A DNA stretch of 40,689 bases, taken from contig NC_068988.1 of assembly GCF_001194135.2 (NCBI RefSeq), forward strand, positions 37,658,973 through 37,699,661, given 5' to 3'. Both the position numbers and the translations under genes were made by a program. The notes under the pieces were generated by a model, which was not told where the DNA came from, did not search any database, and saw only the letters and a list, made by a program, of their open reading frames with translations. This DNA is from Octopus bimaculoides. Its lineage: Eukaryota. The stretch's first letter is position 1. Every line of letters begins with the position of its first letter. Shown here piece by piece: positions 849 to 27,289 of this stretch.

Positions 849-1293
849 ATATGCCGACCGCTGGCAATGTGGAAGCCAAACTGAATGACTCCCATGATAA
901 CACTACATCTTGTTCTATCTTGCTTGTCCTAAAGAATGCTTTCCATTCTTGTGTACCGTTTTCGAAATTAAAGCTATTAGTAGAGAAAAATGGGTCGAAA
1001 AACACTTCTCCGCAAGAGATAGCGACTGTTTACGCGAATTTTGAACTTTTTAAATCTGGTCTGAATACGACTATTAATGACGGCGGTGATAGCTGCAATG
1101 GTGGTACTTGTGGTTATAATAATGGTTATGATGATTATTATAGTGAAGCCGTCCCACATCCACATGTACCCATCGGAAAAGTTAAAGAAAGTAGGATAGG
1201 CTTATTAAACGTTGAAGCCGGGATTGAAAATGTTCCGACGAAAATCGATGAGAGTTCTTCTAGTGTTATTAAATATCGCACGCCAAACTTCAG
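849..1293 (+). CDS. Coding exon (first or 5' coding exon) of an unidentified gene; paralog of 21175-21326
   Basis: Pyrimidine tract plus AG at 847-848, ATG at 851, open frame MPTAGNVEAK...NVEAGIENVPTKIDESSSSVIKYRTPNF, then TTCAG|GTAAGT donor at 1293/1294 (phase 2). The last 28 codons are conserved in the second exon with many synonymous changes. The 5' boundary is less certain than the 3' boundary. Confidence 0.8.
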
Positions 1294-1508
1294 GTAAGTT
1301 CTTGTTTGATTCTGTTATTATTTAGTAAAGAAGCATGCTCATAATTTGAAAAGTTGCCATTAACCAAGCATCAAAACACACACAGGTGTGTGTGTAAACA
1401 TTCGTATGTAAGTGTGTGTGTGTGTGTGTGTGTGTGTAAGCATGTGTATGTAAATGTGTAATGTGTGTGTAAGTATGTGTATGTAAATGTGTATTGTGCG
1501 TGTATGTA

Positions 1509-1745
1509 GAGGCGCGCGGCTAGGTGGTTAGAGTGTTGCACTCACGATCGTAAGATTGTAGTTTCGATTCTTTTATCAAGCGATGCGTTGTGATCTCTTT
1601 GAGCAAAACTCTTCATTTCACGTTGCTCCAGTCCACTCAACTGGCAAAAATGAGTAACCCTACGAGGGACGAGTGTCCCGTCCAGGGATGGGGGAATATC
1701 TACGCTGCAGAATCTGGAAAAACCAGCCCTATGAGCCAACGATCT
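1509..1745 (+). mobile_element. tRNA-headed SINE with CORE-like central region (family D)
   Basis: GGCGCGCGGCTAGGTGGTTAGAGTG (A box) ... GTTTCGATTC (B box), followed by TTGTGATCTCTTTGAGCAAAACTCTTCATTTCACGTTGCTCCAGTCCACTC; ends at a (CT)n tract. Confidence 0.75.
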
Positions 1746-1869
1746 TTAATCTCTCTCTCTCTCTCTCTCNNNNNNNNNNGGAGAAAATAAAGTAAAAAGG
1801 TAAAATATAAAGGAGGAATATATATATACATGTGTGTGTGGGGCCATATATATATATTTGTGTGTGGAC

Positions 1870-1905
<36 letters not shown>

Positions 1906-2083
1906 GCTGTATACTCTGAATATGTATACATACATACACACACACATATATATATATATATTTATTTATATGTTTATCCATGCGTACATGTTATATCAAT
2001 GTTTGTTTTTATGTTGTTATAAAAATAGTTTTACATTAGTATGTAGAATACAAATTTATTATTCGTATACAAGAATGTTGTTG

Positions 2084-2128
2084 ATAGTGACTTCGAAGTT
2101 TCGGCCAGCTAAGCCATCGTCATATTAA
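2084..2128 (-). ncRNA. Degenerate minimal hammerhead ribozyme motif (Penelope type)
   Basis: Minus strand reads AUGACGA-U-GGCU uagcu GGCC-GAAACUUCGAAGU-C. C3 is mutated to A, stem II is intact and helix III is a perfect palindrome ending at a GUC site. Confidence 0.5.
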
Positions 2129-3217
2129 TGTTTATGTGTACATATATGTATGTAAGTGTATATAAATATATAATATAAATGTGTGTATATATATATATAG
2201 ATATATATATACACACACACACATTGCCTATGCTTATATGTGTATTCATGTCAGTGTGTGTGTGTAGAGAGAGAGAAAAACATTTAACTTGTATATTATT
2301 TAATAACAATAACAACGACCAATTGTGTAGCGATAGTATAACCATCAGCCGTCACTCTAATGATTAAAAAGAAATCGGTTGAGTAACAGTGACTTATTGA
2401 CTTTATTGTAACAAACAGTGTGACTGACCATATATCGATTCTATCTGGATGATATGATCACACATAGATACTTACAGTAACAATGTTATTGGTTAGCTGT
2501 GTACAAGCACACATCAAATTACGTCCTTTTTTTTTATGAAATTAATGGAAAAATAAACCACAACTTGAATCGCTTTATTCGAGTTTACGTCGGTCTCAGC
2601 GAACATGTTGAAAAGCATAAAAGTAAATAAAAAAAAAACACCTAAGAACCAAAACTCAAGTGCAAAATTAAATAAAATGCATGCGCATATATGTACATAG
2701 CATTTATTAAAACACATGTAAGCTAATAAAGTTTTTAAAATGTATTTTCATACTGCGTCGATTTTCGAGTGAAGTTACATATCTCGGGACCAGTTACCGA
2801 CGTAAGTTGAGGTATGCCTGAACTAATATTATAGCTTGAGTGAGTGTTTAACTATTTACTGTCCAGTTTTGTTTCCACAGTGAAAACTATATTGACAGAT
2901 AACCATCTCATGAATGCTCGTAGAATTACGTTTTAGATAGTGTTAGCCTATCGAATGTGTGTGTAACATTTTATCGATTCTGCTCTATATATTTCTCTAC
3001 AGAAACTCTGTTATTAGTCAGTTAGTTGGTTATCTCTTTCATTTTTAATTAATTATAATAAATATTTTAGGAATTCTTCGAAACCAGATTGTATTCGCAT
3101 ACACACATTCTCTTTCTTTCTCTCTCTCTTTCTTTCTTTCTCTCTCTCTCTCTTTCTTCTTCTCCCTCTCTTTCTCTCTCTCTCTCTCTCTCCTTCTCTA
3201 TCTCAGACACACTCGTA

Positions 3218-3374
3218 CAAGGACTGTTTTTAGTAGCATCATAGGACCTCGGATAAATCACTGCACAGGGCCCAATAGAATTTATTCATTGAGAGCAAAC
3301 CACAGAAGTGGGCCCCTAGACTCGGGAGTCCCCTGGGAAACTGCCTAGTGTGCCATAGTCTTAAGACACCGACC
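3218..3374. mobile_element. hAT-like MITE, degenerate; same family as 39074-39243
   Basis: Aligns end to end with the reverse complement of 39074-39243 (CAAGGACTGTTTTTAGTAGCATCATAGGACC ... GGAAACTGCCTAGTGTGCCATAGTCTTAAGAC). Confidence 0.6.
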
Positions 3375-4327
3375 CGACCCGCACGCATGCACGCACGTAT
3401 ACACAGTTCTCTGCCAATGCTGTTCTGTTTTTAAAAAAAGGCAGGATCTTTTTTAAAACGGGGGCCACATTTTTCATTAATGTTTTACGTAGTGTTTTTG
3501 GTACGGAAAGACTTTCAAACTTCGTATACTTATCTATTTTGTGTTATAGAACAGAAAAATATTTTTGTATTCGAATTTATTTCATGTAAAAAAATTGTCT
3601 TATTTCGATAATTTCAACCAATCACTGACAAGTATTCAGTTGTTTATATTTACTCCTTTGGCTGATTAAGCGGAGTAAAGCGTATTTAATTTCCATAGCT
3701 TCGTTTTGCTTTTTTCTTTTTAAATTTGCTGTTTTNNNNNNNNNNNNNNNNNNNNNNNNNNNNNNNNNNNNNNNNNNNNNNNNNNNNNNNNNNNNNNNNN
3801 NNNNNNNNNNNNNNNNNNNNNNNNNNNNNNNNNNNNNNNNNNNNNNNNNNNNNNNNNNNNNNNNNNNNNNNNNNNNNNNNNNNNNNNNNNNNNNNNNNNN
3901 NNNNNNNNNNNNNNNNNNNNNNNNNNNNNNNNNNNNNNNNNNNNNNNNNNNNNNNNNNNNNNNNNNNNNNNNNNNNNNNNNNNNNNNNNNNNNNNNNNNN
4001 NNNNNNNNNNNNNNNNNNNNNNNNNNNNNNNNNNNNNNNNNNNNNNNNNNNNNNNNNNNNNNNNNNNNNNNNNNNNNNNNNNNNNNNNNNNNNNNNNNNN
4101 NNNNNNNNNNNNNNNNNNNNNNNNNNNNNNNNNNNNNNNNNNNNNNNNNNNNNNNNNNNNNNNNNNNNNNNNNNNNNNNNNNNNNNNNNNNNNNNNNNNN
4201 NNNNNNNNNNNNNNNNNNNNNNNNNNNNNNNNNNNNNNNNNNNNNNNNNNNNNNNNNNNNNNNNNNNNNNNNNNNNNNNNNNNNNNNNNNNNNNNNNNAT
4301 ATATATATATATATATATATACATATA

Positions 4328-4488
4328 TACGACAGGCTTCTTTCAGTTTCCGTCTACTAAATCCACTCACAAGGCTTTGGTCGGCCCGAAGCTATAGTAG
4401 AAGACACTTGCCCAAGATGCCACGCAGTGGGACTGAACCCGGGACCATGTGGTTGGTAAGCAAGCTACTTACCACACAGCCACTCCTA
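4328..4488 (-). mobile_element. SINE family A (tRNA head plus CORE-like region), 3' part lost in the N gap
   Basis: Reverse complement reads GGAGTGGCTGTGTGGTAAGTAGCTTGCTTACCAACCACATGGTCCCGGGTTCAGTCCCACTGCGTGGCATCTTGGGCAAGTGTCTTCTACTATAG; near-identical to other copies in the window. Confidence 0.9.
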
Positions 4489-4964
4489 CACATATTTTAT
4501 ACACCAGAGTTTTTATATTTATCACCATGTGCATAGTACATACATTTACATTTTCACATTTACAAACATGTACAAATACGGAATTACACAGACACACACA
4601 CAAGCATACGCGCGCACACCCACAACGCACGCATAATGTTGTAATGCCTGTGACATTTCGTTTTGCAAAGTCTCATCTTCCAGCGATCATTTATTTTCCT
4701 CACCCTCCCAAGAACAGATTATTTCCCGGTTAAAATTGAAATAGGGTCCGATTAACAGCTTTTCTACTGCTATCCTAGTTGATTGAATAGTAAATCAGTG
4801 ACGATGGGGAGGGGTGAAGCGGAAACAGCTTATTCTATATTCTCAACAATATAACTTGAGGAACGGGCTGCATACTAAATTCACACATATACGGGCAAGT
4901 CCCAGTATATGAGCTGATAGCGTCTTCGTCTTACTGAGATTATCTGTGCAATTAGTTGGCAAAC

Positions 4965-5185
4965 ACTCATTCTAGGGACTCTTATCTGGAGTACCGCCTC
5001 GAAGGGTTTAGTCGAACAAATCGACCCTAAATAATTATGTAATTCTTTTTTTTTTTTTTAAGTCTGGTACTTATTGTGTCTGTTTCTTTTTCTCGGACCC
5101 CTTAGTTGTGGAGACGTAAGCAAACCAGCATCGGTTGTCAAGCGGCGGAGGGCACAAACACAACACAAGCACTTACACACAAAGA

Positions 5186-5217
<32 letters not shown>

Positions 5218-5420
5218 AATGGTTGTTGTTAATACGCGCGCTTACACACCCACACACACATACTTGATGGGCTTCTTTCAGTTTCCGCCTACCAAATCCA
5301 CTCACAAGGCTTTGATCGGCCCGGGGCTACAGTTGAAGACACCTGCCCAAGGTGCCACGCAATGGGATCGAACCCAAAACTGTATGGTTGGGAAGCAAGC
5401 TTCTTAACCACACAGCCACG
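4965..5420 (-). mobile_element. SINE family A, near full length with internal (TA)n/(CA)n
   Basis: Head at ~5255-5420, microsatellite spacer, and tail (CAGCATCGGTTGTCAAGCG, TTAGTCGAACAAATCGACC) collinear with 26906-27287. Confidence 0.85.
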
Positions 5421-5957
5421 TTTGCATCTATAAAAAAAATATGGAACACTGCACTAATCTGTGCGTCATCTTTGCGCTGGGGCCATGCTAATCTTCTCTG
5501 TATCGTTCTAATTTTAGTGTATGTACTTCCAGAACTTAAGGATTTAAAATCAAGCAAGGGACATAATTTCGCTAAGATCAATTAATTGAACTGATTGGAA
5601 AATAGAGAAAATGCAACACGAGAATGGATTTGATGATTAAAGTTACGAGTGTGGTTCGGTTTTATTAGATCTCCTTAGCAAAGCATATTCTATTCAGTTG
5701 GCAAGTCTATAAAGCTGATCAGTAAATATAGATTTAGAGAAAATGTAGTGACTCCGAATATGAATATTTTCAAAGATTCGTTCTGTACGTGAAATAGATT
5801 TTAAACATCACTAAAGGAAGTTTTTGTCTCTTAATTGCGTGGATAATCTCAGTTAAGAGGAAGCTTTTCAACTCAGTGTATTACATAAGTGAGACCCTAT
5901 CGTATTTTATTCAGTGTATTCTACAACATGACGAGCTATTAAGGTAGTCTATAAAGC

Positions 5958-6106
5958 TAGACATGGGCAACCATGTTTTCGAGAAAAGAATCACATGAGA
6001 CACGGCTCATCATTAGGTGGGCCGCATTACTAAAAAGATTCAAAGCAATTTTTCGTTAGGTCTGGTATTTAGAAAGTCCTGCGGACTGAAAGTTTGCTCA
6101 TGACAC
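5958..6106. mobile_element. hAT-like MITE
   Basis: Imperfect TIRs TAGACATGGGCAA / TTGCTCATGACAC; flanks TATAAAGC / TTTAAACC match at 6 of 8 positions. Confidence 0.5.
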
Positions 6107-6110
6107 TTTA

Positions 6111-6363
6111 AACCAGTTCTCAACAGGGGTTCATATGACCCTTGCGGGGTCCATATAAGATTTTGTTGTTGAAACTTATGTGCAATAAATTGGTTATACT
6201 TCTACGAAACACTTAATACTTTAACAGTTTTTTTATATTGTTCTTAATAATATTTAATTATAAAAATTAAATAAGATTTTTTTAAAGCATCGGACAGTTA
6301 TGAGGGTCCAGTTAAGTAAAACAGGAATTAAAGGAATCCATAGTAAACGGTTGGGAAGCACTA
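6111..6363. mobile_element. hAT-Charlie-like MITE
   Basis: Ends CCAGTTCTCAACAGGGG ... GGTTGGGAAGCACTA resemble CAGTGGTTCTCAAC-type TIRs; internal GGGGTCCAT/GAGGGTCCA repeats. Confidence 0.5.
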
Positions 6364-6544
6364 GTCAAAGCGGTCGCTCAACGTATTAAAAAAAAAAAAG
6401 CAGCTAAATCTTCCTCCAAAGCAACATACTTATTTTAAAAAAAGCAAGTGGTGAGCAGCTTCGTGTTTCATGCAGTTGGGTAACCTTTCTTTGGATGTCA
6501 GCTTAGCACAGGAGTTCTACGCAGCCCACCAATCACTGGGTCGA

Positions 6545-6855
6545 GGACTAGTACTAGAATAGAAAGTGATTCAAAGTGATGAAGAATAGTTAGCAAGATC
6601 AAAGGGGTTGCACTTCTTGGAAATGAGACACACTGTAGTGAGTTTCAAAAGATTGGAATATATGATTAAAATATATGCATACAGAAAGAGGAAGGATTGA
6701 AGAGTTTGGTGAGGATAGGGGTTGCTCTGCTATGCATTGTGTGAAGGTAATGGAAGAGACATTGTCAGGGCTGGTGCTTTGTTGGTCTGAACCGATTCTG
6801 CGGAGTGATGTGCTTGTTGGAATGGAGAGAGATAATTTGGTAAGAGATTTACCCA
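6545..6855 (-). pseudogene. CR1/Jockey-group LINE reverse-transcriptase relic, interrupted by a MITE
   Basis: Minus-strand translation STSPDNVSSITFTQC..., then after a frameshift ISKKCNPFDLANYSSSL; resembles the LINE ORF2 motifs PGPD...C and PIPKKGxxxDPANYRPI. Confidence 0.6.
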
Positions 6856-6863
6856 AGAATCTT

Positions 6864-7108
6864 GGTACTACTAAAGCAGCACGGTCCCGAACGTGCAGTC
6901 ACGCAGTCGCGCGTCCGCGCTAGCTAGTCGTGAGTGGTCGATCCTAACCCTATCCCTAATCCTAACCCTAACTCTATCCCTATCCCTATCCCTAACCCGC
7001 GTGTGCAAATGAATACGTGTTTAGGGTTAGGGTTAGGATCGACCACTCACGACTAGCTAGCGCGGACGCGCGACTGCGCGTTCGGGACCGTGCTGCTTTA
7101 GTAGTACC
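6864..7108. mobile_element. Merlin-like MITE/foldback with telomere-type repeats and a perfect 8-bp TSD
   Basis: About 80-bp near-perfect inverted arms starting GGTACTACTAAAGCAGCACGGTCCCGAACG, with (CCCTAA/CCCTAT)n and (TTAGGG)n inside. AGAATCTT is directly repeated at 6856-6863 and 7109-7116. Confidence 0.85.
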
Positions 7109-7857
7109 AGAATCTTCTGGGAAATTTGCTTGATCCGTCGCCTGACGCGACCTTTGGATGCTTTTCATAGAGAAATGTTATTTTCAAAGCGGAAACCAAC
7201 AGGGTTCCAGGTTTGAGAATAAAATTTCTTCACACTAGTCACGGTGACCCAGAAAAGTACTGACCCCCCCCCCCCNNNNNNNNNNNNNNNNNNNNNNNNN
7301 NNNNNNNNNNNNNNNNNNNNNNNNNNNNNNNNNNNNNNCCCCCCACTCACCCGACTAAACCATTACATATGAAATTCAAAAGAAAAAAAATGGATTCCTA
7401 TAAATTGCAACGTTCCTGAATAATTAACAAGACGCTTGTAAGCTTTCTGTATTGTGTTAGTGTTAAACTCCAAGTCACCTTGAATCAGCAAACCTATGAT
7501 CAAAGGCATTCCGGTCGTGGCTATCTTGTTTTTCTTTCTTATATGCAAATAAATACAAGAGCACGCTCTCCAATACTTTCTCTACTATGATTTGAAGGAG
7601 ATTTCGCTGCTATTTCTTGCAGGTTAAGCAAGTACGTAGAGGTTCTCTTATTGGCTCAAGGAAAGTGTTCATGCATTTAGACTTAATCTGTCGACAGGTT
7701 GAATTCCCTCATCTGGCCTTTAGGTGTCGTTAGCAAAGACCTCTCGGCATGTCTCATGTCTGCATATAATTTAATCTTTTCCTCTTATTAGTTCGTAGTT
7801 CTTAAAAGGAGAGATAGGCCCTACTCTTCCCCCTCTGAGTATACCAGAAGCAATAAC

Positions 7858-8140
7858 AACAACAAGAGCATTCAGAGAGCGGAAACACCAACGTCGTCTC
7901 AACGATTAGCCAGAGGTGATTTTTAAAATGAGAATATTTGAAATAAAGTCGACTGCTCTCACAAACGAGAATACTAAAAATGAACCCGACCGATCTCGAA
8001 AACTAAGTATTAAAAAGAAACGGAAAAATAATCCCAAATCCTTGTCCGGTACCTGATCGATTCCAATGGTTGTCATGGAATGTGAAGGTGGTTGTAGAAA
8101 ATTTAGTAACAGTAAAAAATAGTTTATCCTTATCTAATAA
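7858..8140. mobile_element. Non-autonomous interspersed element (possibly Helitron/Helentron-associated)
   Basis: AACAAGAGCATTCAGAGAGCG... resembles an abundant molluscan repeat from memory; class not verified. Confidence 0.35.
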
Positions 8141-8352
8141 AAGCCAAAGTTAACAAATTCACCATTCAAAATAGTTTCAAAGGCGGAGGTAATAATAATA
8201 ATAAGTTCAACTCAAGAATTTTTAAATGAATAGCATGAGAACTTTTGGTTTTCTCTTCTCCGGCCTTCCTTTAGTATTACTGTTGTTTTAGATCGATGTA
8301 TGGATGTATACACATATGTGTAAGTATACTGTAAAATGTTAATATGTATGTA

Positions 8353-8690
8353 TCTATATATATAAAAATGAGAATGTGTGTCTGTCTGTCTGTGTGAATC
8401 CCTAAAACTCGAGAACTACGCAACCAATTTCATTCAAATTTTACACATGCCTTACTTAGGGTTCCAGTTGTGTTTTAGTCAAAAAAATTTTTTAACTTCT
8501 TGCAGAGTTCGAGCACACGGCAACATAATATCTCTTCCACTATTTAAGTATTACGTGTCAAAAGTGAAACAAAAACACTCATGTCAATTACTTTCACTTT
8601 AAAAATGAAACTATTCCACTAACTGAAACAATCACATTTCGATACTGTAATGACAGATACTTTCACAGAGAGAGAGAGAGAGATGTATAT
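8353..8690 (+). mobile_element. Helitron 5' terminal region
   Basis: A|TCTATATATATAAAAATGAG followed by a (TGTC)n tract is a typical Helitron 5' TC end; a helicase fragment follows across the gap. Confidence 0.6.
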
Positions 8691-9393
8691 GTATACATAT
8701 ACATNNNNNNNNNNNNNNNNNNNNNNNNNNNNNNNNNNNNNNNNNNNNNNNNNNNNNNNNNNNNNNNNNNNNNNNNNNNNNNNNNNNNNNNNNNNNNNNN
8801 NNNNNNNNNNNNNNNNNNNNNNNNNNNNNNNNNNNNNNNNNNNNNNNNNNNNNNNNNNNNNNNNNNNNNNNNNNNNNNNNNNNNNNNNNNNNNNNNNNNN
8901 NNNNNNNNNNNNNNNNNNNNNNNNNNNNNNNNNNNNNNNNNNNNNNNNNNNNNNNNNNNNNNNNNNNNNNNNNNNNNNNNNNNNNNNNNNNNNNNNNNNN
9001 NNNNNNNNNNNNNNNNNNNNNNNNNNNNNNNNNNNNNNNNNNNNNNNNNNNNNNNNNNNNNNNNNNNNNNNNNNNNNNNNNNNNNNNNNNNNNNNNNNNN
9101 NNNNNNNNNNNNNNNNNNNNNNNNNNNNNNNNNNNNNNNNNNNNNNNNNNNNNNNNNNNNNNNNNNNNNNNNNNNNNNNNNNNNNNNNNNNNNNNNNNNN
9201 NNNNNNNNNNNNNNNNNNNNNNNNNNNNNNNNNNNNNNNNNNNNNNNNNNNNNNNNNNNNNNNNNNNNNNNNNNNNNNNNNNNNNNNNNNNNNNNTATAC
9301 TTACATTGTGATTTCTGCAATGTGGTGCATAAATTGTCAAGTAAATGAGACGCATCTTTGCCTCCACTGATTCACTTGCAAAGTGTTGAATAA

Positions 9394-9657
9394 AATTATT
9401 TCGTTGCAGACCTCCGGCCATTTTGTTCTGTTGTTAATTCTGTAGATGACCTCAAACACAAAGTCTTTCCCAACTTTAAACAAAACTACCAAAGTCAGAA
9501 TTGGCTATGTGAAAGAGCAATATTAGCTCCAAAAAACGTAGCTGTTACAAAAATTAATCAACACCTGATGCATTCTCTTCCCGGCGATCTTCAAACTTAC
9601 AAGTCTGTTGATACAGTTCCAGATACAAATGAAGTGGTGAACTATCCTCCTGAATAG
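9394..9657 (+). pseudogene. Helitron RepHel PIF1-type helicase fragment
   Basis: Open frame FCSVVNSVDDLKHKVFPNFKQNYQSQNWLCERAILAPKNVAVTKINQHLMHSLPGDLQTYKSVDTVPDTNEVVNYPPE contains the WLCERAILAPKN and YKSVD..NYP motifs of Helitron helicases; truncated at a SINE. Confidence 0.9.
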
Positions 9658-9659
9658 AC

Positions 9660-9860
9660 ACAAAACCTGAAAATTTGGGGGGAAGGGGCTAGTCGATTAT
9701 ATCGACCCAGTCTTCAACTGGTACTTATTTCATCAACTCCGAAAGGATGAAAGGCAAAGTCGACCTCGGCGAAATTTGAACTCAGAACATAAATACGGAC
9801 GAAATGCCGCTAAGCATTTCGCCTGGCGTGCATACGATTCTGCCAGCTCACTACCTTAAT
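9660..9860 (-). mobile_element. SINE family B
   Basis: Reverse complement of GAGCTGGCAGAATCGT...ATGCTTAGCG...GTTCTGAGTTCAAATT..GCCGAGGTCGACTTTGCCTTTCATCCTTTCGG...AAGTACCAGTT. Confidence 0.9.
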
Positions 9861-9884
9861 AATAATAATAATAATAATAATAAT

Positions 9885-11864: not shown

Positions 11865-12739
11865 CTTAGTCTTCTCTTAGTAAAATCTGTTAAATGTTCG
11901 CATTTTCTTTTGTTGTAATATACGCAGCCGGCTCAATCTCACACTCGATTAATACAGTAACAGCACCTAACTCCGACATTGATACAATACCTCTATACTC
12001 AACAGCGACTGATATAAAGATTTGGCATATACGTATTTTTTAAATATCTGTTGTGTGCGAAGACTTAATACAGAAATAGTTTTAACTTTGCAAATAGTTT
12101 TTCGTTGAACTCATAAGCACATAGTTGGCGTGGTTTGTTGTTGTATTAATATGATCTAACTTTTAAAACGATTTTCTAAGATATGGTATATGAAATATCA
12201 GAAGATTTTAAAAACCATATGTGATCAGATAAAGCAGTTTTTGTATTTTTTTTTTTTAGTTGATGAGTTAGTGTTTAGGTTGGGCAAAAGCGATCTTTAA
12301 AGGAATTTGAACTCAGAGCTATGTATGAGAAATATGAAGAAGTATGTTGAAGAAAAGAGGCGGGTTGATTTTAAATGCTGTATAATATACGAATTCTTTT
12401 GTTAAATATTTTCCTTGTAAAGAGTATAGGTTTGTGCAAGTTCAATATGGAGTCTTGCTTTTATATTACACAGCACAACACAAAACAAAACTGAATAGGA
12501 AATCATATGTGGATAATATATCTACACTCTACAGCCGTGGTTCCCAAACTGTTATTTATATTTTGTCGCTTTTATCCCCATTTAAATTACTCCAGCGTAA
12601 AATTTGGTTTTATACAAAATACAAGTGTGTAATTCTAGAATAATTCAAAATTTGCTAAAGAGTGCAGTTATAGACTCAGTTTTTGTGAAATGGATGAAAT
12701 TGTATAACCCACCCGATGGTTTTCTATATAGTTTCTATC

Positions 12740-12845
12740 TACTCACAAGGCTTGGATAAATCTGAAGTTATGGTAAATTCATTTGCACAAGATGCCATGC
12801 ATTGGGATTCGACCCGGGACTTCATAGTTTCGAAGCCATACCTTA
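12740..12845 (-). mobile_element. Degenerate SINE family A head/core
   Basis: CTCACAAGGCTT...TTGCACAAGATGCCATGCATTGGGATTCGACCCGGGAC aligns to the family A copies. Confidence 0.6.
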
Positions 12846-13960
12846 TGTGTTTCCACATAGTTTTGGTCACATGATGTTGACGCCATTTTCTTAATAGCCA
12901 TCTTATTCTTAGGTGGAACACGATGACATGAGACTGTGGGATCTTCCTTGCTGCGTTATTGATATTATTACTTCAGCGAAATGTTTGTGTGCTATACACT
13001 AGTTCCCAAAACATGATTTTTTTCCCCCCTATCCCAACCGGGGTAATTATCTTGAGTTTAGGACACACTACTTGCAGAATTCCTCTCAAAAAAAAAAAAG
13101 GAAAAGAAGAGACGATTAATGACGCAAGTAATGTTCATAACAGTACAATGCTTCGAATAAACGAAGAACGCTAGTCACAGAAACAAAACATCGAACTAAC
13201 GATGTATAAATCTAATTGATAATATTCAAATATATGTTTGGAGTGAAGTTTTCCCGTAAATTAGCGAATCAGAAAATAAAAGCTAATAAAATAAGTATAC
13301 ACCGATAAAATAAGTATTACACCCAGGGTTTGATATGGTCAAAATTTTGGAGTTGTGGCCCTGGCGTAGTCGCAATTCAATGACGAAGACTAATGAAAGA
13401 ATTGTTTCTAATATGAGAAGTAATATTTGTTGCCATGTTGAAGTTGTAACAGACATTACTTCTCAGAATTGTTACTACTTTCATCTCTTAGATTTTCTAA
13501 CTAGCTACTTAGCTTAGTGTTTCTCATATTTTTTTTTATCAAGATATTTCTTTTAAATTTTTTTTTTCTTTAAACGGTTTTTGAAATTTCTTAAACAATT
13601 TCTAAAAAATTGTCACCCTTTCTTGTCTTCTTCTTCTTTTAACTTCTCTTAATTGTCTTACTGTACCGCCAAACAAGTGTAATTATTCATAATAGTCAGC
13701 ATATATAAACAATGATTATCAAATTTAATATGGAACAGCAATTAAATCGGTTTCATTAACCCCAGACTCTCATGTTTATTTTTATAAGCATAAAACAGTA
13801 ATTAAGTCAGTTTAATTAAGCATAATAGCCAACATCTGTAAATAATGTTTATAATTGCATCTTGTGCGTCAGCTTATTTACAATGTCTACGTCACTGAAT
13901 ATTAATAAAGATCGGCATCGTTTGCTAATTTAGATGAACGTCTCCGAGAACTCTTCCTAT

Positions 13961-13997
<37 letters not shown>

Positions 13998-14080
13998 TCA
14001 TGTGAAATCGTTAATCCCGACATTTTTTTCTCTCTCCGTCTCCACCCCCCACTCTTACACCATTTTTACCCTCTCATTCC

Positions 14081-14116
14081 TTTCTATGGAAGAGCATTGG
14101 CTCGAAATATCAAAAA
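14081..14116 (+). ncRNA. Degenerate minimal hammerhead ribozyme motif (Penelope type)
   Basis: UUU-CUAUGGA-A-GAGC auug GCUC-GAAAUAU-C-AAAA; perfect 4-bp stem II and AUAU palindromic helix III, but the core is corrupted (CUAUGGA instead of CUGAUGA). Confidence 0.45.
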
Positions 14117-14254
14117 CTTTTCCATTCTTCCCAAGCGTCAAACTAGTACACCTACTTCTTGTTCCCTCACCTGTCTTTGGTTTTTGTAAATTTGAACTAT
14201 ATGTCTACATCTATATCCATCTATCTATCTATCTATCTGTCTATCTATGTGTGT

Positions 14255-14435
14255 GATACCGCTTGACAACTGGTATTGGTTTGTTTATGTTCCATAATTT
14301 GGCAGTTCGACTAAAGAGACTGATAAAATAAATATCAGGCTTTAAAAGACAAGTACTGGAGTGAACTCGTCTGATTAAAACCCTGTAAGGCGGTGTCTCA
14401 GTATGGTTTCAGTCCAGTGACTGAAAAAAGAAAGA
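14255..14435 (+). mobile_element. 3' part of SINE family A
   Basis: CCGCTTGACAACTGGTATTGG...GTAAGGCGGTGTCTCAGTATGG...GTGACTGAAA. Confidence 0.7.
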
Positions 14436-14920
14436 CTCATTTAATTTTATTTACATTCAGTGGAATTTTTTGTCGTATATTTATTTACTTAATTGGTGTT
14501 TTTAGGGGAGGGGAAGCTTTGTTTAAAAATATGTCGTATGACGATTATAGGATGAATGACCTTAACATTTCATAAAATGCAAAGTACACAACGAATAACC
14601 GAAACGAGATCGTCTTTTCCAGAGGTTAGAAGGAAAGAGAAGGAGAAAAAATAACCATAATAAAATGGCCGGAAATTACTTTCATATACAATATGAAAAC
14701 GAATACACTGATATTACAAATGGCGAAAGAGAAAGAAAAGAAACTTATAAAATATCATAAGTAAATTTGAGAGTATATGTATGTCTGTGTACGTATATAG
14801 ACAGAGGTTCTTAAAAGAGAATTTCACATTGACAGTAGGAAAGAAGTGAAAGGGATTCATATTGAAAGTGTGTGTGAGAGAGAGAGAGAGAAAATCACGT
14901 TTTAGAAAGCACGAAAGAGT

Positions 14921-14960
<40 letters not shown>

Positions 14961-15154
14961 GCCCGCGTGCACATATATATATGCGAGAAGTGTGATGATT
15001 GCAATACGGAGAGTGAGTAGGTTATAAATACAGAGATTTGGTGAGACGAGGTGCATAGAGAGATATTGTTTGAAGATAGAGAAATTCTTAGCGGGAGAGG
15101 TGGGTGGAGTAATGAAAAGATTTAATCTAAAGAGAGAAGGAGAAACGAGAGGGC

Positions 15155-15194
<40 letters not shown>

Positions 15195-15776
15195 CCTATA
15201 TATGCAAATATATATAAACATACACATACACATACACACATAAGTAGAAAAAGTATTTTATTTTATTTTTGCTTTTTCATTTCTTCAAATCACAACTAAA
15301 CTGATGTCGCTGCAGTTATTTACTTATATCTATAAATTATAGTGAATAATAAATAAATATTATAGTTGCTCTAGTTAAATACACTTCCTAACTTCATAGA
15401 AGAAAGACACTTCAAAGTCACTAAAATATCACAAGGCTGTTTTTATATATCATATATCAATATCGTGCCATTTTGAAATTGGCATAGAGTTTCTTTCTGT
15501 TGACACTTCGACACCATGTTCTTTCGAGATTCTTCTTTCCCTGAAAGACTTCAGTCAGCCCTGATTAGACAGACCTATGGTCAGAGGCGCTCCCGTTGTG
15601 ACCATCCCACTTTTTTTTATAGATAGTATACCTACAGTTATTTTAAAACTGGAAAGTGTTACAAAGTTGCTTTTTATCCCCAAGTCTCCATTTATCGAAC
15701 AGATCTTTGAACGAAAGCATTCCAAACGTGACCATCTAGAAAATACTGGCCTTGCGCCAAAATTTCGGTATTCATA

Positions 15777-15970
15777 AGGTGGTGAGCTGGCAGTATCGTT
15801 TCCACATCGGAAACATTTCTTTTGACTTTACGTTCCGTGTTCAAATGTCGCCGGGGACGGCTTTCATCCTTTCAGGATCGATAAAATAAGTACCAGTTGA
15901 ACACTAGTGTCGATGTGATCAACGTACCCTTTCCCTCGAAATTACTGGCCGTGTGCCAAAATTTAAAACC
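15777..15970 (+). mobile_element. SINE family B
   Basis: AAGGTGGTGAGCTGGCAG...CTTTCATCCTTTCAGGATCGATAAAATAAGTACCAGTTG...GGCCGTGTGCCAAAATTT. Confidence 0.85.
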
Positions 15971-15993
15971 AATATTTTGATATTCAACTAAAG

Positions 15994-16541
15994 CAGGGGT
16001 CGGGGAACCTTTTTAACCAATTATCCCAAAATATATTTATTTACACCGACGTTACCCCAACCCTTGATTCGAAAAGAAGAGAATCATAGATTTTTTAAAT
16101 TCAAGAGGTTTGTTGAATCTATTTATATGGAGAATACAATTTATAAATATAAAAAGTATAAGACAAACGCCATAAAATAAATTACTATCCTCATTATGAA
16201 ACTTTTTCACTTCAAGTTTTGGAGAAATAATGTTGCATTTTTGTTGCAATTACATCAAAATTGGGGAATTTTGATGCCAGAGCAATTTTGATACAGTCTT
16301 CAGAGTTCAATCAATTTTGTTAAAGAGTTATTGAATAACTACTTAAATCTACTTAGATAAAGCAAAAACACGTGTATCAAACAATAAGGTCAAGGTGGGT
16401 AATAGACAACTAACAAATAATGTTGTCAGAAGAAAATTTCTGTCGTAACAAGGAACACAGTTTTTATATAATTTTACTTATGTCTAATGAGTCCTCATTA
16501 TCTCCAAGAATTTCATTTTTACCCCGGTTCGCAGATCCCTG
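15994..16541. mobile_element. hAT-like non-autonomous DNA transposon (548 bp)
   Basis: TIRs CAGGGGTCGGGGAACC / GGTTCGCAGATCCCTG; 8-bp flanks AACTAAAG / AACTAAGG match at 7 of 8 positions. Confidence 0.75.
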
Positions 16542-16545
16542 AACT

Positions 16546-16775
16546 AAGGCGACGAGCTGGCAGAATCGTTAGCACGCCTGCCGGAATGCTTAGCGGTATT
16601 TCGGCTGCCGTTACGTTCTGAGTTCAAATTCCGCCGAGGTTGACTTTGCTTTTCATCCTTTTGGGGTCGATAAATTAAGTACCAGTTACGCACTGGGGTC
16701 GATCTAATCGACTTAATCGCTTTGTCTGTTCTTGTTTGTCCCCTCTATGTTTAGCCTCCTGTGGGCAATAAAGAA
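16546..16775 (+). mobile_element. SINE family B
   Basis: Close to the window consensus, AAGGCGACGAGCTGGCAGAATCGTTAGCACG...GGCAATAAAGAAATAA. Confidence 0.9.
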
Positions 16776-16777
16776 AT

Positions 16778-16942
16778 AAGAATCGTTAGCACGCCGGGCA
16801 AAGTGCTTAGCAGTAATTCTTTCGGCTTTACGTTCTGATTTAAATTCCACCGAGATCGACTTTGCGTTTCATCCTTTCTGGGTCAAAACCAGTTAAGCAC
16901 TGGGATCAATGTGATCGACTTCCTTAAAATTTCAGGCCTTGA
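16778..16942 (+). mobile_element. SINE family B, tandem partner
   Basis: Starts AGAATCGTTAGCACGCCGGG directly after the tail of the previous copy. Confidence 0.85.
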
Positions 16943-17296
16943 AAGAATATTACTATATCCAACATTATANNNNNNNNNNNNNNNNNNNNNNNNNNNNNNN
17001 NNNNNNNNNNNNNNNNNNNNNNNNNNNNNNNNNNNNNNNNNNNNNNNNNNNNNNNNNNNNNNNNNNNNNNNNNNNNNNNNNNNNNNNNNNNNNNNNNNNN
17101 NNNNNNNNNNNNNNNNNNNNNNNNNNNNNNNNNNNNNNNNNNNNNNNNNNNNNNNNNNNNNNNNNNNNNNNNNNNNNNNNNNNNNNNNNNNNNNNNNNNN
17201 NNNNNNNNNNNNNNNNNNNNNNNNNNNNNNNNNNNNNNNNNNNNNNNNNNNNNNNNNNNNNNNNNNNNNNNNNNNNNNNNNNNNNNNNNNNNNNNN

Positions 17297-17329
<33 letters not shown>

Positions 17330-17349
17330 TGAGAGAGAGAGAGAGAGAC

Positions 17350-17545
17350 CCAGCATCGCTTGACAACGGTGTTGATGCGTTTACGTCCCTGTAACTTAAT
17401 TGTTCGGCGAAAGAAACCGATAGAATAAGTACCAGGCTTTAAGAAAAGAAAACAAAAGGTAGTAGGGTCGATTCGTTCGACTAAAATTCTTCAAGGCAGT
17501 GCCCCAGCATGGCTACAGTCTAATGACCGAAGCAAATAAAAAAGA
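17350..17545 (+). mobile_element. 3' part of SINE family A (head probably in the N gap)
   Basis: CAGCATCGCTTGACAAC...TTTACGTCCCTGTAACTT...CCCCAGCATGGCTACAGTC. Confidence 0.8.
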
Positions 17546-18379
17546 TTAAAGAGAGATACTGTTGACCATGTATGATCACATTATTAGGGAAATAAATGAC
17601 ACATTTTGACAAGCTTTGCGCTTCACTTGTTTATTGACGCGACAAATGCGAAACTGATCGGGGAACTGACTATCAGATAGTTGCAGGTTGATATAGGAAT
17701 TAGCAAAGTACACCCTACGTCAGCACCAGTTAGTTTACTTGCATTTGATAGTGCCATATAGAACACTGTAACTTAACCATTACAGTGATTATTTCTGTAG
17801 TCATGATTGTTCAGCAACTTCATTGGACCCCGTAAGTTTTTCTTTGGTAAGTGATATGATGTAACAGACTACTAATGTTGAGAGACTTAGGAAGAAATTC
17901 TGGTACCTACAGTACTGCTTTGTTGTCACGACAACAATCGGCAGTTTATTTATTTATTTATTTGTTCTCGACCATATCCATTGCAGATTGTTAAAATTAT
18001 TCTATGAATTTTCGTATACATGTTGAATTAACTCTTTCCTTACTAGTGGTATAATGAGCAAGTATGTCAATGGTATCAGTAACTATAGAGTACTAACAAC
18101 ATCAGGAATTCTGTCGTCACTAAATGGCAACATCTATTTAGCGTAGTACACAAAATCGAACGTGTAACATGATGTTATTCGCAGGGAGATAATTCAGGAG
18201 TCTCGTATCAGTACCGAGACAAAAAATGAAAAATAAAAAGAATTACTTGATTGTTTTCAAGCAGACACACACACAATATAAGAGGGCCGTGCTATCCATA
18301 TATGCTGAAAAAATTGGGCGAAAATCGTTTCCCAAGAATGCGAGATGATTCGGTTACTAATATATACTTTTACGTACAC

Positions 18380-18722
18380 ACGACATCGTCAATGAAAGAT
18401 TTGCATTTGAACTCACTGTTTGGTGAATAGACTTGCAACAGCCACAGCTGTCCTTCCTTTAGCATAAGATTCAGATGGCAAACTCTCCTGCGCATTGGGA
18501 TACACTCCATAACACAATCCGTTAGCCAAGGGACTTGTGAGTATCCCCCACACCTGAATAATGGAATTTCCAGCCTCCATCCAAATAGATCTACAATACC
18601 AGAGACACAGAACCGCATAGAGGAGACGCCGACTTTTCCAAGCCGGTAACGTTTGGTCTCCTTCATTGGTCTCTACTCGTTATCCGTAAGGCTTATAACA
18701 TTCCAATTCCCAATCACTAACA
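18380..18722 (-). pseudogene. RTE-clade LINE (Expander/Rex3-like) AP-endonuclease N-terminal relic
   Basis: Minus-strand LLVIGNWNVISL..ETKRYRLGKVGVSS..GSGIVDL..GVGILTSP.LTDCV.ECIP..RVCHL.L...LLQVYSPNSEF..FIDDV matches the RTE APE domain, with stops and frameshifts. Confidence 0.85.
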
Positions 18723-19016
18723 GCTGTTCCCTCCTGGACTCGCTTCGGGGTTTTGTGATCCGCAACCATTGTCCTTCCACCCAACACCTCCCAGAACAAG
18801 TTGCAGGCTTATTGTTGGTTGTAGTAGCATTGAGTGAGGACTGCAATATCTTTTACGAATGCGTCCTTCTACGTAAGGTCCGAACAATTTCCTTGTTAGC
18901 CTGTGCGACGGACGATGTAGTATGACTAATTTTTCTACGCCTTTTCATATTGAGCATTTTGATGATCTTAATCGCGCCTGGCACGAAACTGGTATTTGCA
19001 TTGGACCTGCGCAGAG

Positions 19017-19470
19017 TCGAAATCTTTCCATGTGGGTGTTGGACTTCGGCAGGGGTACATAATGACACTTCCTTTTCATCGACGACATACTGCTACTTAG
19101 CTGCCGAGTGTCGCTAAGCAAGGTTAAGAATTAGTATTAGTGGAACATCACTAAGACAAGTGGAGAAGTTTTCTCTGAAGTAACGTTACTCGACAGGGTA
19201 CGCAGCTCCGGTATCAACGAGTATCTATAGGTCGAGTCGCTACTTCTCCATTTGTTAGAATGTCGCAGGAAAGGATCGCGAGACACATTTTTCAAACCCA
19301 GCCAACAGGCCGGAGATCTAAGGGACCACGAATGAGATGGTTAGTTAATATCCATAGTCTCAGTTGATCACACCTGGAAATTCAGCAGGGAAATTGAATG
19401 ACGGTTGTTTCTGATAGGAACCTATGGAGGAAGTGCTTCAAGACCCTTTCAGGAATAGGGGGCAGCAGCG
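19017..19470 (+). pseudogene. RTE-clade LINE RT and 3' end, serially deleted
   Basis: Plus-strand motif pieces in order: SKSFHVGVGLRQG, LFI|DDILLL, AAEC..LRIS, SGTSLRQVEKF, VTLLDRVRSS, RMSQERIAR..GRRSKGPRMRW, DRNLWR. Confidence 0.85.
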
Positions 19471-20179
19471 AAAGTGGATGTATATACACACTTAAAATAT
19501 CGGCAAGACTTCCGCCCGTCTCCCCACCCCAAACCACCCATTTTTCAACTTTTTTTTTCGACCCCCCCCCCTCTTTTCGGCTACAGGGAATATGAATCTG
19601 CAAAGAAATTGGCAAAAATCGGCATTTTAAAACTAACNNNNNNNNNNNNNNNNNNNNNNNNNNNNNNNNNNNNNNNNNNNNNNNNNNNNNNNNNNNNNNN
19701 NNNNNNNNNNNNNNNNNNNNNNNNNNNNNNNNNNNNNNNNNNNNNNNNNNNNNNNNNNNNNNNNNNNNNNNNNNNNNNNNNNNNNNNNNNNNNNNNNNNN
19801 NNNNNNNNNNNNNNNNNNNNNNNNNNNNNNNNNNNNNNNNNNNNNNNNNNNNNNNNNNNNNNNNNNNNNNNNNNNNNNNNNNNNNNNNNNNNNNNNNNNN
19901 NNNNNNNNNNNNNNNNNNNNNNNNNNNNNNNNNNNNNNNNNNNNNNNNNNNNNNNNNNNNNNNNNNNNNNNNNNNNNNNNNNNNNNNNNNNNNNNNNNNN
20001 NNNNNNNNNNNNNNNNNNNNNNNNNNNNNNNNNNNNNNNNNNNNNNNNNNNNNNNNNNNNNNNNNNNNNNNNNNNNNNNNNNNNNNNNNNNNNNNNNNNN
20101 NNNNNNNNNNNNNNNNNNNNNNNNNNNNNNNNNNNNNNNNNNNNNNNNNNNNNNNNNNTGTGTGTGTGTGTGTGTAGAA

Positions 20180-20265
20180 TGTACAATGTCAAACTCAGAA
20201 CGTAAAGAGGCGGCAGAAATGCCGCTAAGCATTTTGTCCGATATGATTCTGCCAGCTCGCCACCC
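20180..20265 (-). mobile_element. SINE family B 5' fragment
   Basis: AAACTCAGAACGTAAAG...CCGCTAAGCATTTTGTCC...ATTCTGCCAGCTCGCCACC. Confidence 0.75.
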
Positions 20266-21174
20266 CAATAATAATAATAATAGGTTGTAGTATTGGCACA
20301 AGGTCTGAAATTTGGGAAAGGGACTTTGGACGTTTGGAGACAATGCAAATGCGAAATACAGAACAAGATAGCGGGGACGGGAGGGATTAACACACATTCA
20401 CAAACATACACTTGTTCGTGTAACGGTAATGTTAGCTGTTAAATTTGGGTTTGTGATTTCAGTTTCCACCTACAGAGGTGTGTACATGTATGCACGCGCA
20501 TGCGTATACATACATACATACATACATACATAATATAATATAATACATAATAAGAGTTGTGTGGTTAAGAAGTTCGCTTTCAACCATTTGATCCCAGATT
20601 CAATCCTGTAGCTCGGAATATGCTGTAGAGATATATATATTTTTTTAAACTGAAGCTCAGAGTTTGTCTCGCAACTCGAGTTTCACGCAGGCCGGCACAC
20701 ACACACACACACACACATTTATACATACATACATGTGTGTGTGCGTGTGTATGTAAAATACTGTTGTTACATCCGACTGTATCGAAGTTCTTTCCATTGG
20801 CCATCACTCTCCAGCCAAAGATTGCTTTCGTACATGGTAGTCGACCAAGGAATTGGGATGCCTTTACTAAGTATAGTTATTTAGTACGTAGAAATATTTT
20901 CAAATACTACCTGGTGTTGGAGAAAGAAGAGGGAAAAGGGAGATAGTTACTGAGATGCGTGCAATTGTTCTTATTAACGAAAGTCATTGTGACATCATAG
21001 AAAACGTATCAACGTAATGAAGACGGTCTTGGTGGATCGAATTCAGTGGGAAGAAATAAGTACCGAACATCCTCGGCAAACTTTTTCTTTTCCGATCTGG
21101 CCTTTTTAAATTAATCAAAGAACGTTTACAGAACGGGACATAATTGGTAATATATTTCGTGTGTTAAAGTGAAA

Positions 21175-21326
21175 ATGAACAATAACATGTTTATAGGTAC
21201 TGATTCCTTAAAAGATACTGCCAACAGATTAATTGTATATAATGCGGAAGCCACAATTGACCATGAACCAACAAAAATCGACGAATCTTCTCCAACAGTT
21301 CTTAAGTATCGCACACCAAACTTCAG
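21175..21326 (+). CDS. Coding exon, paralog of 849-1293 (shorter N-terminus)
   Basis: MNNNMFIGTDSLKDTANRLIVYNAEATIDHEPTKIDESSPTVLKYRTPNF followed by TTCAG|GTAAGG donor (phase 2). 20 of the last 28 residues are identical to the first exon, with 8 synonymous differences. The start could be ATG 21175, ATG 21187 or an acceptor at TATAG|21197. Confidence 0.8.
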
Positions 21327-27287: not shown

Positions 27288-27289
27288 AG

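What the first reader, a model, noticed from the sequence alone, without database searches (positions are those of the whole stretch)
849..21326. Two paralogous coding exons 20 kb apart sharing a conserved C-terminal motif and splice donor: tandem genes or a variable-first-exon array
Seen: exons ending at 1293 and 21326 encode NVEAGIENVPTKIDESSSSVIKYRTPNF and NAEATIDHEPTKIDESSPTVLKYRTPNF. They are 20/28 identical, 8 of the identical residues use different synonymous codons, and both end TTCAG|GTAAG in phase 2. This indicates purifying selection on protein and splicing. Their upstream N-termini are unrelated (about 120 versus about 22 aa). I found no duplicated downstream exons in either half, although several kb are N. 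Inference: these may be alternative first exons, each with its own promoter, spliced onto shared constant exons further downstream (UGT1A or vertebrate clustered-protocadherin-like logic) in a gene family I do not recognise. The simpler alternative is two tandem paralogous genes.
Basis: partly seen in the sequence, partly recalled or inferred. Interest (0 to 1): 0.7.

Follow-up and report, generated by a model that had tools for sequence, protein, structure and literature searches.

The report
Two alternative first exons of octopus FAM78B
The two look-alike exons are alternative first coding exons of one Octopus bimaculoides gene, FAM78B-like, each carrying its own copy of the start of the conserved FAM78 domain; public annotation already lists the two products as isoforms X1 and X2, so the finding is real but ordinary.

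Summary
Exon A (ATG 851 to donor 1293) and exon B (ATG 21175 to donor 21326) share a 34-residue C-terminal stretch. In the last 28 residues, 20 are identical and 8 of those use different codons. dN/dS is about 0.19. Both exons end TTCAG|GTAAG in phase 2, and no assembly gap touches either exon.

Exon A is the first coding exon of XP_014790473.1 (FAM78B isoform X1, 378 aa). Exon B is the first coding exon of XP_014790474.1 (isoform X2, 281 aa). Both isoforms continue into the same 230 residues, which are not in the window. The gene spans about 105 kb.

A spliced transcript contig from a close Octopus relative joins exon B's donor to the constant part. For exon A the join rests on gene models in four octopods, not on a transcript.

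The shared motif is the bilaterian-conserved start of the FAM78 domain, and it forms confident beta-strands in a predicted structure. The intron position and phase are the same in the limpet Patella.

So the alternative-first-exon reading is supported, with two members rather than a UGT1A- or protocadherin-like array. The tandem-gene reading is rejected. It is already annotated, so interest is low.

The parts
851..1293 (+). Exon A, coding part. It runs from the ATG to the splice donor and encodes residues 1-147 plus two bases of codon 148 of FAM78B isoform X1 (XP_014790473.1).
   Evidence: Its translation is identical to P0001 residues 1-147. phmmer gives E = 1.1e-93 at 100% identity. Against a close Octopus species the exon is 95.7% identical, compared with 86% for the 5' flank and 77% for the intron, and omega is 0.27.
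851..1192 (+). The exon A-specific N-terminal extension (residues 1-114), conserved among octopods, with no counterpart in exon B or in other molluscs.
   Evidence: The four octopod sequences share an invariant core, VLKN.FHSCVPFSKLKLLV.KNG.K..S..EIATVY. Omega between Octopus species is 0.145. AlphaFold confidence is below 50 apart from weak helices. Other molluscan orthologues lack it.
1193..1293 (+). Copy A of the shared motif (SRIGLLNVEAGIENVPTKIDESSSSVIKYRTPNF-R), which is the start of the FAM78 domain.
   Evidence: tblastn pairs it with 21226-21327 at E = 1.6e-10. The columns are nearly invariant across FAM78 proteins. In the model it forms strands 116-125, 131-133, 139-143 and 147-155 at pLDDT about 95.
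1294..1298 (+). Splice donor GTAAG of exon A (phase 2).
   Evidence: Read directly from the sequence. The X1 protein switches to sequence absent from the window exactly here.
21119..21174 (+). 5' untranslated part of exon B, at least this long. An in-frame stop lies 24 nt upstream of the ATG.
   Evidence: Transcript contig L001 nt 1-56 is colinear with the window from 21119, where the contig ends; that is not a mapped transcription start. The in-frame TAA is visible in the frame translation.
21175..21326 (+). Exon B, coding part. It encodes residues 1-50 plus two bases of codon 51 of FAM78B isoform X2 (XP_014790474.1).
   Evidence: Its translation is identical to P0037 residues 1-50. L001 matches 21119-21326 at 98% and then continues into the constant exon. 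Omega against the related species is 0.085.
21226..21326 (+). Copy B of the shared motif (NRLIVYNAEATIDHEPTKIDESSPTVLKYRTPNF-R). This copy is closer to the consensus of other molluscs.
   Evidence: Shown by tblastn and by the alignment with molluscan and vertebrate FAM78 proteins.
21327..21331 (+). Splice donor GTAAG of exon B (phase 2). Its use is shown by a transcript.
   Evidence: The L001 alignment ends exactly at 21326 and the contig goes on with AGCCAGTGCC..., which encodes R-ASATV.
21332..40689 (+). Part of the long intron shared by both isoforms. It holds only repeats and transposon relics, and the constant exons lie beyond the window end.
   Evidence: tblastn with the 230-residue constant part finds nothing in the window. 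No Pfam domain was found in any + strand ORF of 35 aa or more. The gene range is 105,008 bp.

Best explanation
The window holds the 5' part of a single very long gene (about 105 kb), the Octopus bimaculoides FAM78B-like gene. Its first coding exon has been duplicated. Each copy has its own start codon and its own copy of the first ~34 residues of the conserved FAM78 domain. Each ends at the same ancestral phase-2 intron (TTCAG|GTAAG).

A transcript uses one copy or the other and splices it to the same downstream exons, which lie outside the window. By analogy with Patella these are a ~38-codon exon and a ~192-codon exon. The result is two proteins with an identical 230-residue body. Isoform X2 (281 aa, exon B) has the short N-terminus typical of FAM78. 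Isoform X1 (378 aa, exon A) adds an octopod-conserved 114-residue extension.

The motif is under purifying selection in both copies because it forms beta-strands that belong to the folded domain, so whichever exon is used must supply it.

Shown here: the exon identities, the shared constant sequence, use of exon B's donor, selection on both exons, and the ancestral intron position. Inferred: that exon choice is made by two separate promoters, and that the two isoforms differ in location or tissue. The biochemical function of FAM78 itself is unknown.
For: Exon A equals residues 1-147 of P0001 (XP_014790473.1, FAM78B isoform X1), and exon B equals residues 1-50 of P0037 (XP_014790474.1, isoform X2).

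The remaining 230 residues of X1 and X2 are identical, and the same holds for the O. sinensis X1/X2 pair. Those residues are not encoded in the window. The gene range is 105,008 bp on a 97.8 Mb record of GCA_001194135.2.

Spliced contig L001 (Logan, SRR3401912) matches window 21119-21326 at 98%, stops at the donor and continues with the constant exon.

Exon A-type proteins are also modelled in O. sinensis, O. vulgaris and Argonauta hians.

Both exons are under purifying selection: between the paralogous copies omega is 0.19 with dS about 1.1, and between species omega is 0.27 for A and 0.085 for B.

The motif columns are nearly invariant in 24-25 FAM78 proteins and are present in fish, frog, amphioxus and priapulid sequences. 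In the AlphaFold model residues 116-374 have pLDDT above 90 and the motif forms four strands, one of which crosses the exon junction.

Patella caerulea FAM78A has three coding exons in 2.4 kb, and its first ends ...KYRTPNF + AG|GT in the same phase.
Against: I could not reach any transcript that joins exon A to the constant exons in an Octopus species. That join rests on gene models from several annotation pipelines and on conservation. The only Logan contigs covering exon A are unspliced.

The DNA of the constant exons could not be fetched because the gene range is too long. So the acceptor itself was never seen, and the rest of the intron could not be searched for further first exons.

No transcription start site data are available. 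A shared upstream non-coding exon with mutually exclusive splicing is therefore not excluded.
Confidence: 0.85

Rival explanations
1. These are two tandem paralogous FAM78 genes, each with its own downstream exons.
For: The first exons are old duplicates (dS about 1.1). About 2 kb of the interval between them is unread N.
Against: No trace of the 230-residue constant part exists anywhere in the window. tblastx of one half of the window against the other finds only SINE-like repeats and the exon pair. X1 and X2 have identical constant sequence, which could not be so if the downstream exons had diverged as much as the first exons. No single gap (at most 591 N) could hold the ~576-nt last exon unless its length is underestimated. 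RefSeq treats the locus as one 105 kb gene.
Confidence: 0.03
2. There is one promoter and mutually exclusive splicing. Both exons would be internal, preceded by a shared non-coding first exon upstream of the window or near its start, and the choice would be made by the spliceosome rather than by promoter use.
For: An AG with a pyrimidine tract (tttgtttgtttcag) lies about 78 nt upstream of exon A's ATG. The 5' end of L001 at 21119 is a contig end, not a mapped start. No transcription start data were available.
Against: L001 is colinear with the genome for 56 nt upstream of exon B's ATG and shows no splice junction. From general knowledge, duplicated 5' coding exons that each carry their own ATG are usually driven by their own promoters; this was not tested here.
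Confidence: 0.1
3. Exon A is a decaying or unused duplicate that gene predictors wrongly attach to the gene, and only the exon B isoform is real.
For: Direct transcript evidence was found only for exon B. All Logan contigs with exon A are unspliced.
Against: Exon A keeps an intact 147-codon ORF and a consensus donor. It is 95.7% identical between Octopus species, against 77-86% in its flanks, and omega for the extension is 0.145. The extension is conserved in Argonauta hians, with many invariant columns. A long N-terminal form spliced at the same junction is expressed in another cephalopod (L002).
Confidence: 0.03

Closest known systems
FAM78A / FAM78B (family with sequence similarity 78), a bilaterian-conserved protein family of unknown function
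   Same: The encoded protein is a full-length member. A profile built from it and its molluscan relatives hits fish and frog FAM78A at E about 1e-95 to 1e-99, with 47-50% identity over the whole domain. The N-terminal motif I-D-x-x-P-T-x-I-D-E-S-S-x-V-L-[KR]-Y-[RK]-T-P-x-F-R is shared. The three-coding-exon layout and the phase-2 intron after ...TPNF are shared with Patella.
   Different: In octopods the first coding exon is present twice, one copy carries a 114-residue extension, and the gene is 105-148 kb long against 2.4 kb in Patella. Many orthologues start at or contain Met-Gly (MGLASS..., MGCIQS...), and neither octopus first exon does.
Genes with alternative first coding exons that arose by tandem exon duplication (alternative promoter / alternative 5' exon usage)
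   Same: There are two homologous 5' exons, each with its own ATG and a donor of the same phase, joined to one set of downstream exons. This gives proteins that differ only at the N-terminus.
   Different: Nothing unusual for this class. Separate promoters are inferred, not shown.
UGT1A locus and vertebrate clustered protocadherins (variable-first-exon arrays)
   Same: The logic is the same: a variable 5' exon is chosen and spliced to constant exons.
   Different: Only two variable exons are seen, in the window and in RefSeq isoform lists, rather than 9 to more than 50. The variable exon encodes about 34 residues of the conserved domain plus an optional extension, not a whole substrate-binding or extracellular domain.

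Membership tests
FAM78 protein family | Significant full-length sequence similarity to vertebrate FAM78A/FAM78B | tested here: met
   The profile search hits fish, Xenopus, amphioxus and Saccoglossus FAM78A/B at E from 1e-93 to 1e-99. The sources name P0001 'protein FAM78B isoform X1'.
FAM78 protein family | Conserved N-terminal motif ...ID..PT.IDESS..VLKYRTPNFR leading into ...W.VGWIQAC | tested here: met
   Both exon A and exon B carry it, and the columns are at least 90% conserved in 24-25 sequences.
FAM78 protein family | A curated domain model (Pfam) matches the protein | tested here: not met
   Pfam-A returned no family for P0001 at E <= 0.1. No Pfam entry is precomputed for any homologue either. 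The library appears to hold no model for this family, so this is a limit of the library rather than evidence against membership.
FAM78 protein family | Ancestral gene structure: phase-2 intron after ...TPNF | tested here: met
   Patella caerulea L008 exon 1 ends AAT TTC AG|GTTTGT. Both octopus exons end AAC TTC AG|GTAAG.
Alternative-first-exon gene (shared constant exons) | Each variable exon has its own start codon and a donor of the same phase | tested here: met
   ATG at 851 and at 21175; an in-frame stop lies upstream of the exon B ATG; both donors are phase 2.
Alternative-first-exon gene (shared constant exons) | Exon B's donor is spliced to the constant exons | tested here: met
   Spliced contig L001. 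The X2 models in two species have constant parts identical to X1.
Alternative-first-exon gene (shared constant exons) | Exon A's donor is spliced to the same constant exons | tested here: inconclusive
   This is supported only by gene models: RefSeq X1 in O. bimaculoides and O. sinensis, and the O. vulgaris and Argonauta hians annotations. L002 shows an analogous long form in another cephalopod. No octopus transcript across this junction could be reached.
Alternative-first-exon gene (shared constant exons) | No copy of the constant exons between the variable exons | tested here: met
   tblastn of the 230-residue constant part finds nothing in the window. Caveat: 2,075 N lie between the exons.
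Alternative-first-exon gene (shared constant exons) | A separate promoter or transcription start for each first exon | not testable with these tools
   No CAGE, 5' RACE or read-level RNA data are available. The L001 5' end at 21119 is only a contig end.
UGT1A / clustered-protocadherin-type variable-exon array | Many tandem variable first exons | tested here: not met
   There are two copies in the 40.7 kb window, and only X1 and X2 appear in the protein cluster for two species. The remaining ~65 kb of the gene could not be read.
UGT1A / clustered-protocadherin-type variable-exon array | The variable exon encodes a complete specificity-determining domain | tested here: not met
   The variable exon supplies only the first ~34 residues (four strands) of a ~260-residue domain, plus, in exon A, a low-confidence extension.
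Tandem paralogous genes | Each first exon is followed by its own diverged set of downstream exons | tested here: not met

The most novel reading that the evidence does not exclude
The duplicated first exon may be a cephalopod innovation (at least octopod, possibly coleoid) that gives an otherwise uniform and uncharacterised bilaterian protein a second N-terminal module under its own promoter. This module is long, contains cysteines and has been conserved since Octopus and Argonauta diverged. The two isoforms would then be directed to different tissues or membranes. That could replace the Met-Gly start (a candidate lipid-anchor signal, on my own reading) seen in many other FAM78 proteins and missing from both octopus exons.
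Probability: 0.35. Interest if true: 0.3.

Novelty: already known. Interest (0 to 1): 0.15.

Why it matters
It matters little beyond tidy annotation. The case is a clean example of a duplicated first exon kept in two copies because each must supply the opening strands of a folded domain. It also shows how far cephalopod genes have expanded: 2.4 kb in a limpet against 105-148 kb in octopods for the same three-exon coding layout. FAM78 is conserved across Bilateria, and the papers found here mention it only in association and expression studies. The octopod-specific long isoform could give an experimental handle on function, for example through isoform-specific localisation. The architecture itself is already in RefSeq.

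Tried and rejected
1. Word-indexed protein search with exon A alone returned nothing. This was a false negative: the exhaustive HMMER search and a later indexed search both found P0001 at 100% identity.

2. Pfam on the two exon peptides and on full-length X1 found no family.

3. Pfam on concatenated stop-to-stop ORFs found only sub-threshold noise. This covered the whole + strand at 35 aa or more and a selection of - strand ORFs of 45 aa or more. No other recognisable exon is in the window.

4. tblastx of the first half of the window against the second half, to look for paralogous downstream exons, found only SINE-like repeats and the exon pair.

5. Fetching the whole gene failed in O. bimaculoides, Argonauta hians and O. 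sinensis because the gene range is too long. The acceptor and the rest of the intron were therefore not examined.

6. PDB sequence search with the family profile gave no relative. Foldseek of the model against the PDB gave nothing below E = 1e-3, and TM-scores stayed below 0.4. I draw no functional inference from the fold.

7. I tested whether the long N-terminus of the other cephalopod's transcript (P0007) is homologous to the exon A extension. BLASTP found only the shared motif, and hhalign gave E = 0.16 over 13 columns. This is not demonstrated.

8. A literature search for FAM78A/B returned only association and expression studies, none describing a mechanism. A search on octopus alternative first exons found nothing relevant.
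Full report
**Observation**

Reading the window confirms the two exons. On the + strand an ORF with its ATG at 851 runs to 1293 and ends ...NVEAGIENVPTKIDESSSSVIKYRTPNF, followed by AG|GTAAGT. A second ORF, with its ATG at 21175 and an in-frame stop 24 nt upstream, runs to 21326 and ends ...NAEATIDHEPTKIDESSPTVLKYRTPNF, followed by AG|GTAAGG.

20 of 28 residues are identical, 8 of those use different codons, and both introns are phase 2.

The match extends to 34 residues and has tblastn E = 1.6e-10 within the window, with no third copy. Third codon positions carry 13 of the 23 differences. Nei-Gojobori gives dS about 1.1, dN about 0.21 and omega about 0.19. Fisher's exact test gives p = 0.002. 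Nucleotide similarity stops right after GTAAG.

**Assembly gaps**

No gap touches either exon. The nearest are 477 nt downstream of exon A's donor and about 1 kb upstream of exon B's ATG. Independent contigs from related octopuses are colinear with 498-1417 and 21119-21326. Only the A-to-B distance is uncertain, since 2,075 of its 19,881 bases are N.

**What the gene is**

Pfam and a first word-indexed protein search gave nothing. An exhaustive HMMER search of 1.84 billion representatives with exon A found a 378-residue protein, P0001, identical over residues 1-148. It also found three short unspliced ORFs from other molluscs that end or diverge exactly at ...TPNFR.

P0001 is XP_014790473.1, 'protein FAM78B isoform X1 [Octopus bimaculoides]', from assembly GCA_001194135.2, and its gene range is 105,008 bp. 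Its cluster also holds these proteins:
- XP_014790474.1, isoform X2, 281 aa.
- The O. sinensis X1/X2 pair, 379 and 281 aa.
- An O. vulgaris protein of 379 aa.

X2 begins with exactly the exon B peptide. The remaining 230 residues of X1 and X2 are identical, in O. sinensis as well. Argonauta hians has an exon A-type protein of 382 aa.

**Where the rest of the gene lies**

The 230-residue constant part is not encoded anywhere in the window. Comparing the two halves of the window in all frames finds only SINE-like repeats and the exon pair. No ORF of 35 aa or more on the + strand, and none of the selected - strand ORFs of 45 aa or more, matches a Pfam family.

Exon B therefore sits inside the first intron of the X1 model, which is more than 39 kb long. 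Both first exons reach forward to exons beyond position 40689.

**Transcript evidence**

Logan contig L001 (SRR3401912, 915 nt) encodes a 283-residue exon B-type protein. Its first 208 nt match window 21119-21326 at 98% and stop exactly at the predicted donor. The contig then continues with AGCCAGTGCC..., which encodes R-ASATV and is absent from the window. That shows directly, in a close relative, that exon B's donor is used and joined to the constant exons.

For exon A I found only unspliced contigs (L003-L007). The A-to-constant join therefore rests on gene models from several annotations.

Contig L002 is a 1,490-nt spliced mRNA from another cephalopod-like source. It carries a 177-residue N-terminus joined at the same TTCAG|AGC junction. 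I could not show that its extension is homologous to the exon A extension.

**Is exon A a real coding exon?**

Against a close Octopus species, exon A is 95.7% identical, while its 5' flank is 86% and its intron 77% identical. Omega is 0.27 overall and 0.145 for the 114-residue extension. The extension has a long run of invariant residues across O. bimaculoides, O. sinensis, a third Octopus and Argonauta. Exon B has omega 0.085. Both exons are under purifying selection as protein.

**Why the motif is shared**

In alignments of 24-25 FAM78 proteins the motif columns are at least 90% conserved: I, T, E, S, V, Y, T, P, F and R of I-D-x-x-P-T-x-I-D-E-S-S-x-x-V-L-K-Y-R-T-P-N-F-R. Fish, frog, amphioxus, priapulid and bryozoan sequences carry the motif too. 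A profile of the molluscan sequences hits vertebrate FAM78A at about 1e-95 to 1e-99.

An AlphaFold2 model of X1 was built from 24 aligned sequences (mean pLDDT 74, pTM 0.67). Residues 116-374 form a confident beta-rich domain with pLDDT mostly above 90. The motif forms strands 116-125, 131-133, 139-143 and 147-155, and the last strand crosses the exon junction. The exon A extension is below pLDDT 50. The motif is thus the opening part of the fold, and any first exon must supply it.

**Ancestral gene structure**

Patella caerulea FAM78A has three coding exons in 2.4 kb: residues 1-55, 56-94 and 95-285. Its first exon ends AAT TTC AG|GTTTGT, at the same position and phase as both octopus exons. 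An older O. bimaculoides model (A0A0L8I686) starts just before TSWEFQ, which matches the second Patella intron.

Exon B matches the length of the usual molluscan first exon (51 against 56 codons) and is closer in sequence to it. Exon A looks like the derived copy.

**Mechanism and rivals**

The best account is a single gene with two alternative first coding exons that arose by exon duplication and splice to common exons (confidence 0.85). Separate promoters are inferred.

- Tandem genes are rejected. There is no second constant set, X1 and X2 have identical constant sequence, and the locus is one 105 kb gene.
- A shared upstream non-coding exon with mutually exclusive splicing cannot be excluded without transcription start data.
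- Exon A as a prediction artefact is unlikely given its conservation.

**Comparison and novelty**

The locus shares the splice logic of UGT1A and clustered protocadherins but not their scale or their domain logic, because it has only two exons, each supplying about 34 residues of the domain. The two isoforms are already in RefSeq for two Octopus species, so this is known at the level of annotation.

The function of FAM78 remains unknown. There is no PDB relative by sequence and no significant fold match. The papers found mention it only in association and expression studies.

Noticed in passing
window 9394-9654 (+), directly after the gap at 8705-9295: An 87-residue open stretch (..WLCERAILAPKNVAVTKINQHLMHSLPGDLQTYKSVDTVPD..) matches the Helraiser Helitron transposase (PDB 7lcc_A residues 1277-1320) at E = 1.1e-4. 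It looks like a Helitron helicase relic inside the intron. Pfam gave nothing.
   Followed up: partly
window 23799-24059 (-): An 86-residue ORF (..WLPNFPDCNPIDYVWSAVEKD..) reminds me of the C-terminal end of Tc1/mariner-type DDE transposases. This is from memory only: Pfam and PDB sequence search found no match.
   Followed up: partly
window 4305-4495, 5245-5441, 26893-27286, 27294-27581, 36021-36398; and a second family at 9655-9868, 16545-16715, 28876-29097, 39844-40066: Two families of short interspersed repeats, about 170-390 bp and 75-95% identical, lie in both orientations and account for nearly all self-similarity in the window. Several flank assembly gaps.
   Followed up: no
window 6855-7116, 24822-25091, 30328-30579, 32723-32881: Four segments of about 160-270 bp each match their own reverse complement at 73-77% identity. 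They are long imperfect palindromes, possibly hairpin-forming repeat elements.
   Followed up: no
Orthologue N-termini (P0010, P0015, P0020, P0028, P0056, P0066, P0077, P0078) compared with window 851 and 21175: Many FAM78 proteins start with, or contain just before the domain, Met-Gly (MGLASS, MGVASS, MGANHS, MGCIQS), which from my own knowledge resembles an N-myristoylation signal. Neither octopus first exon (MPTAGN, MNNNMF) has Gly at position 2.
   Followed up: no
Locus L008 (Patella caerulea) compared with the octopod gene ranges: The same three-coding-exon gene spans 2.4 kb in Patella but 105 kb in O. bimaculoides, 113 kb in Argonauta hians and 148 kb in O. sinensis. That is a 40- to 60-fold intron expansion.
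   Followed up: partly
P0021 (275 aa, Logan transcript) and the rotifer homologues P0044-P0054: P0021 is a more divergent FAM78 sequence, 55% identical and with its own constant part; it may be a second paralogue, and its source organism is unknown. Bdelloid rotifer homologues are much longer, at 420-495 aa.
   Followed up: no
Tool behaviour: The word-indexed protein search missed a 100%-identical database protein (P0001) when queried with the 148-residue exon A peptide. It found that protein later with a different query. Negative results from that tool should not be read as absence.
   Followed up: yes
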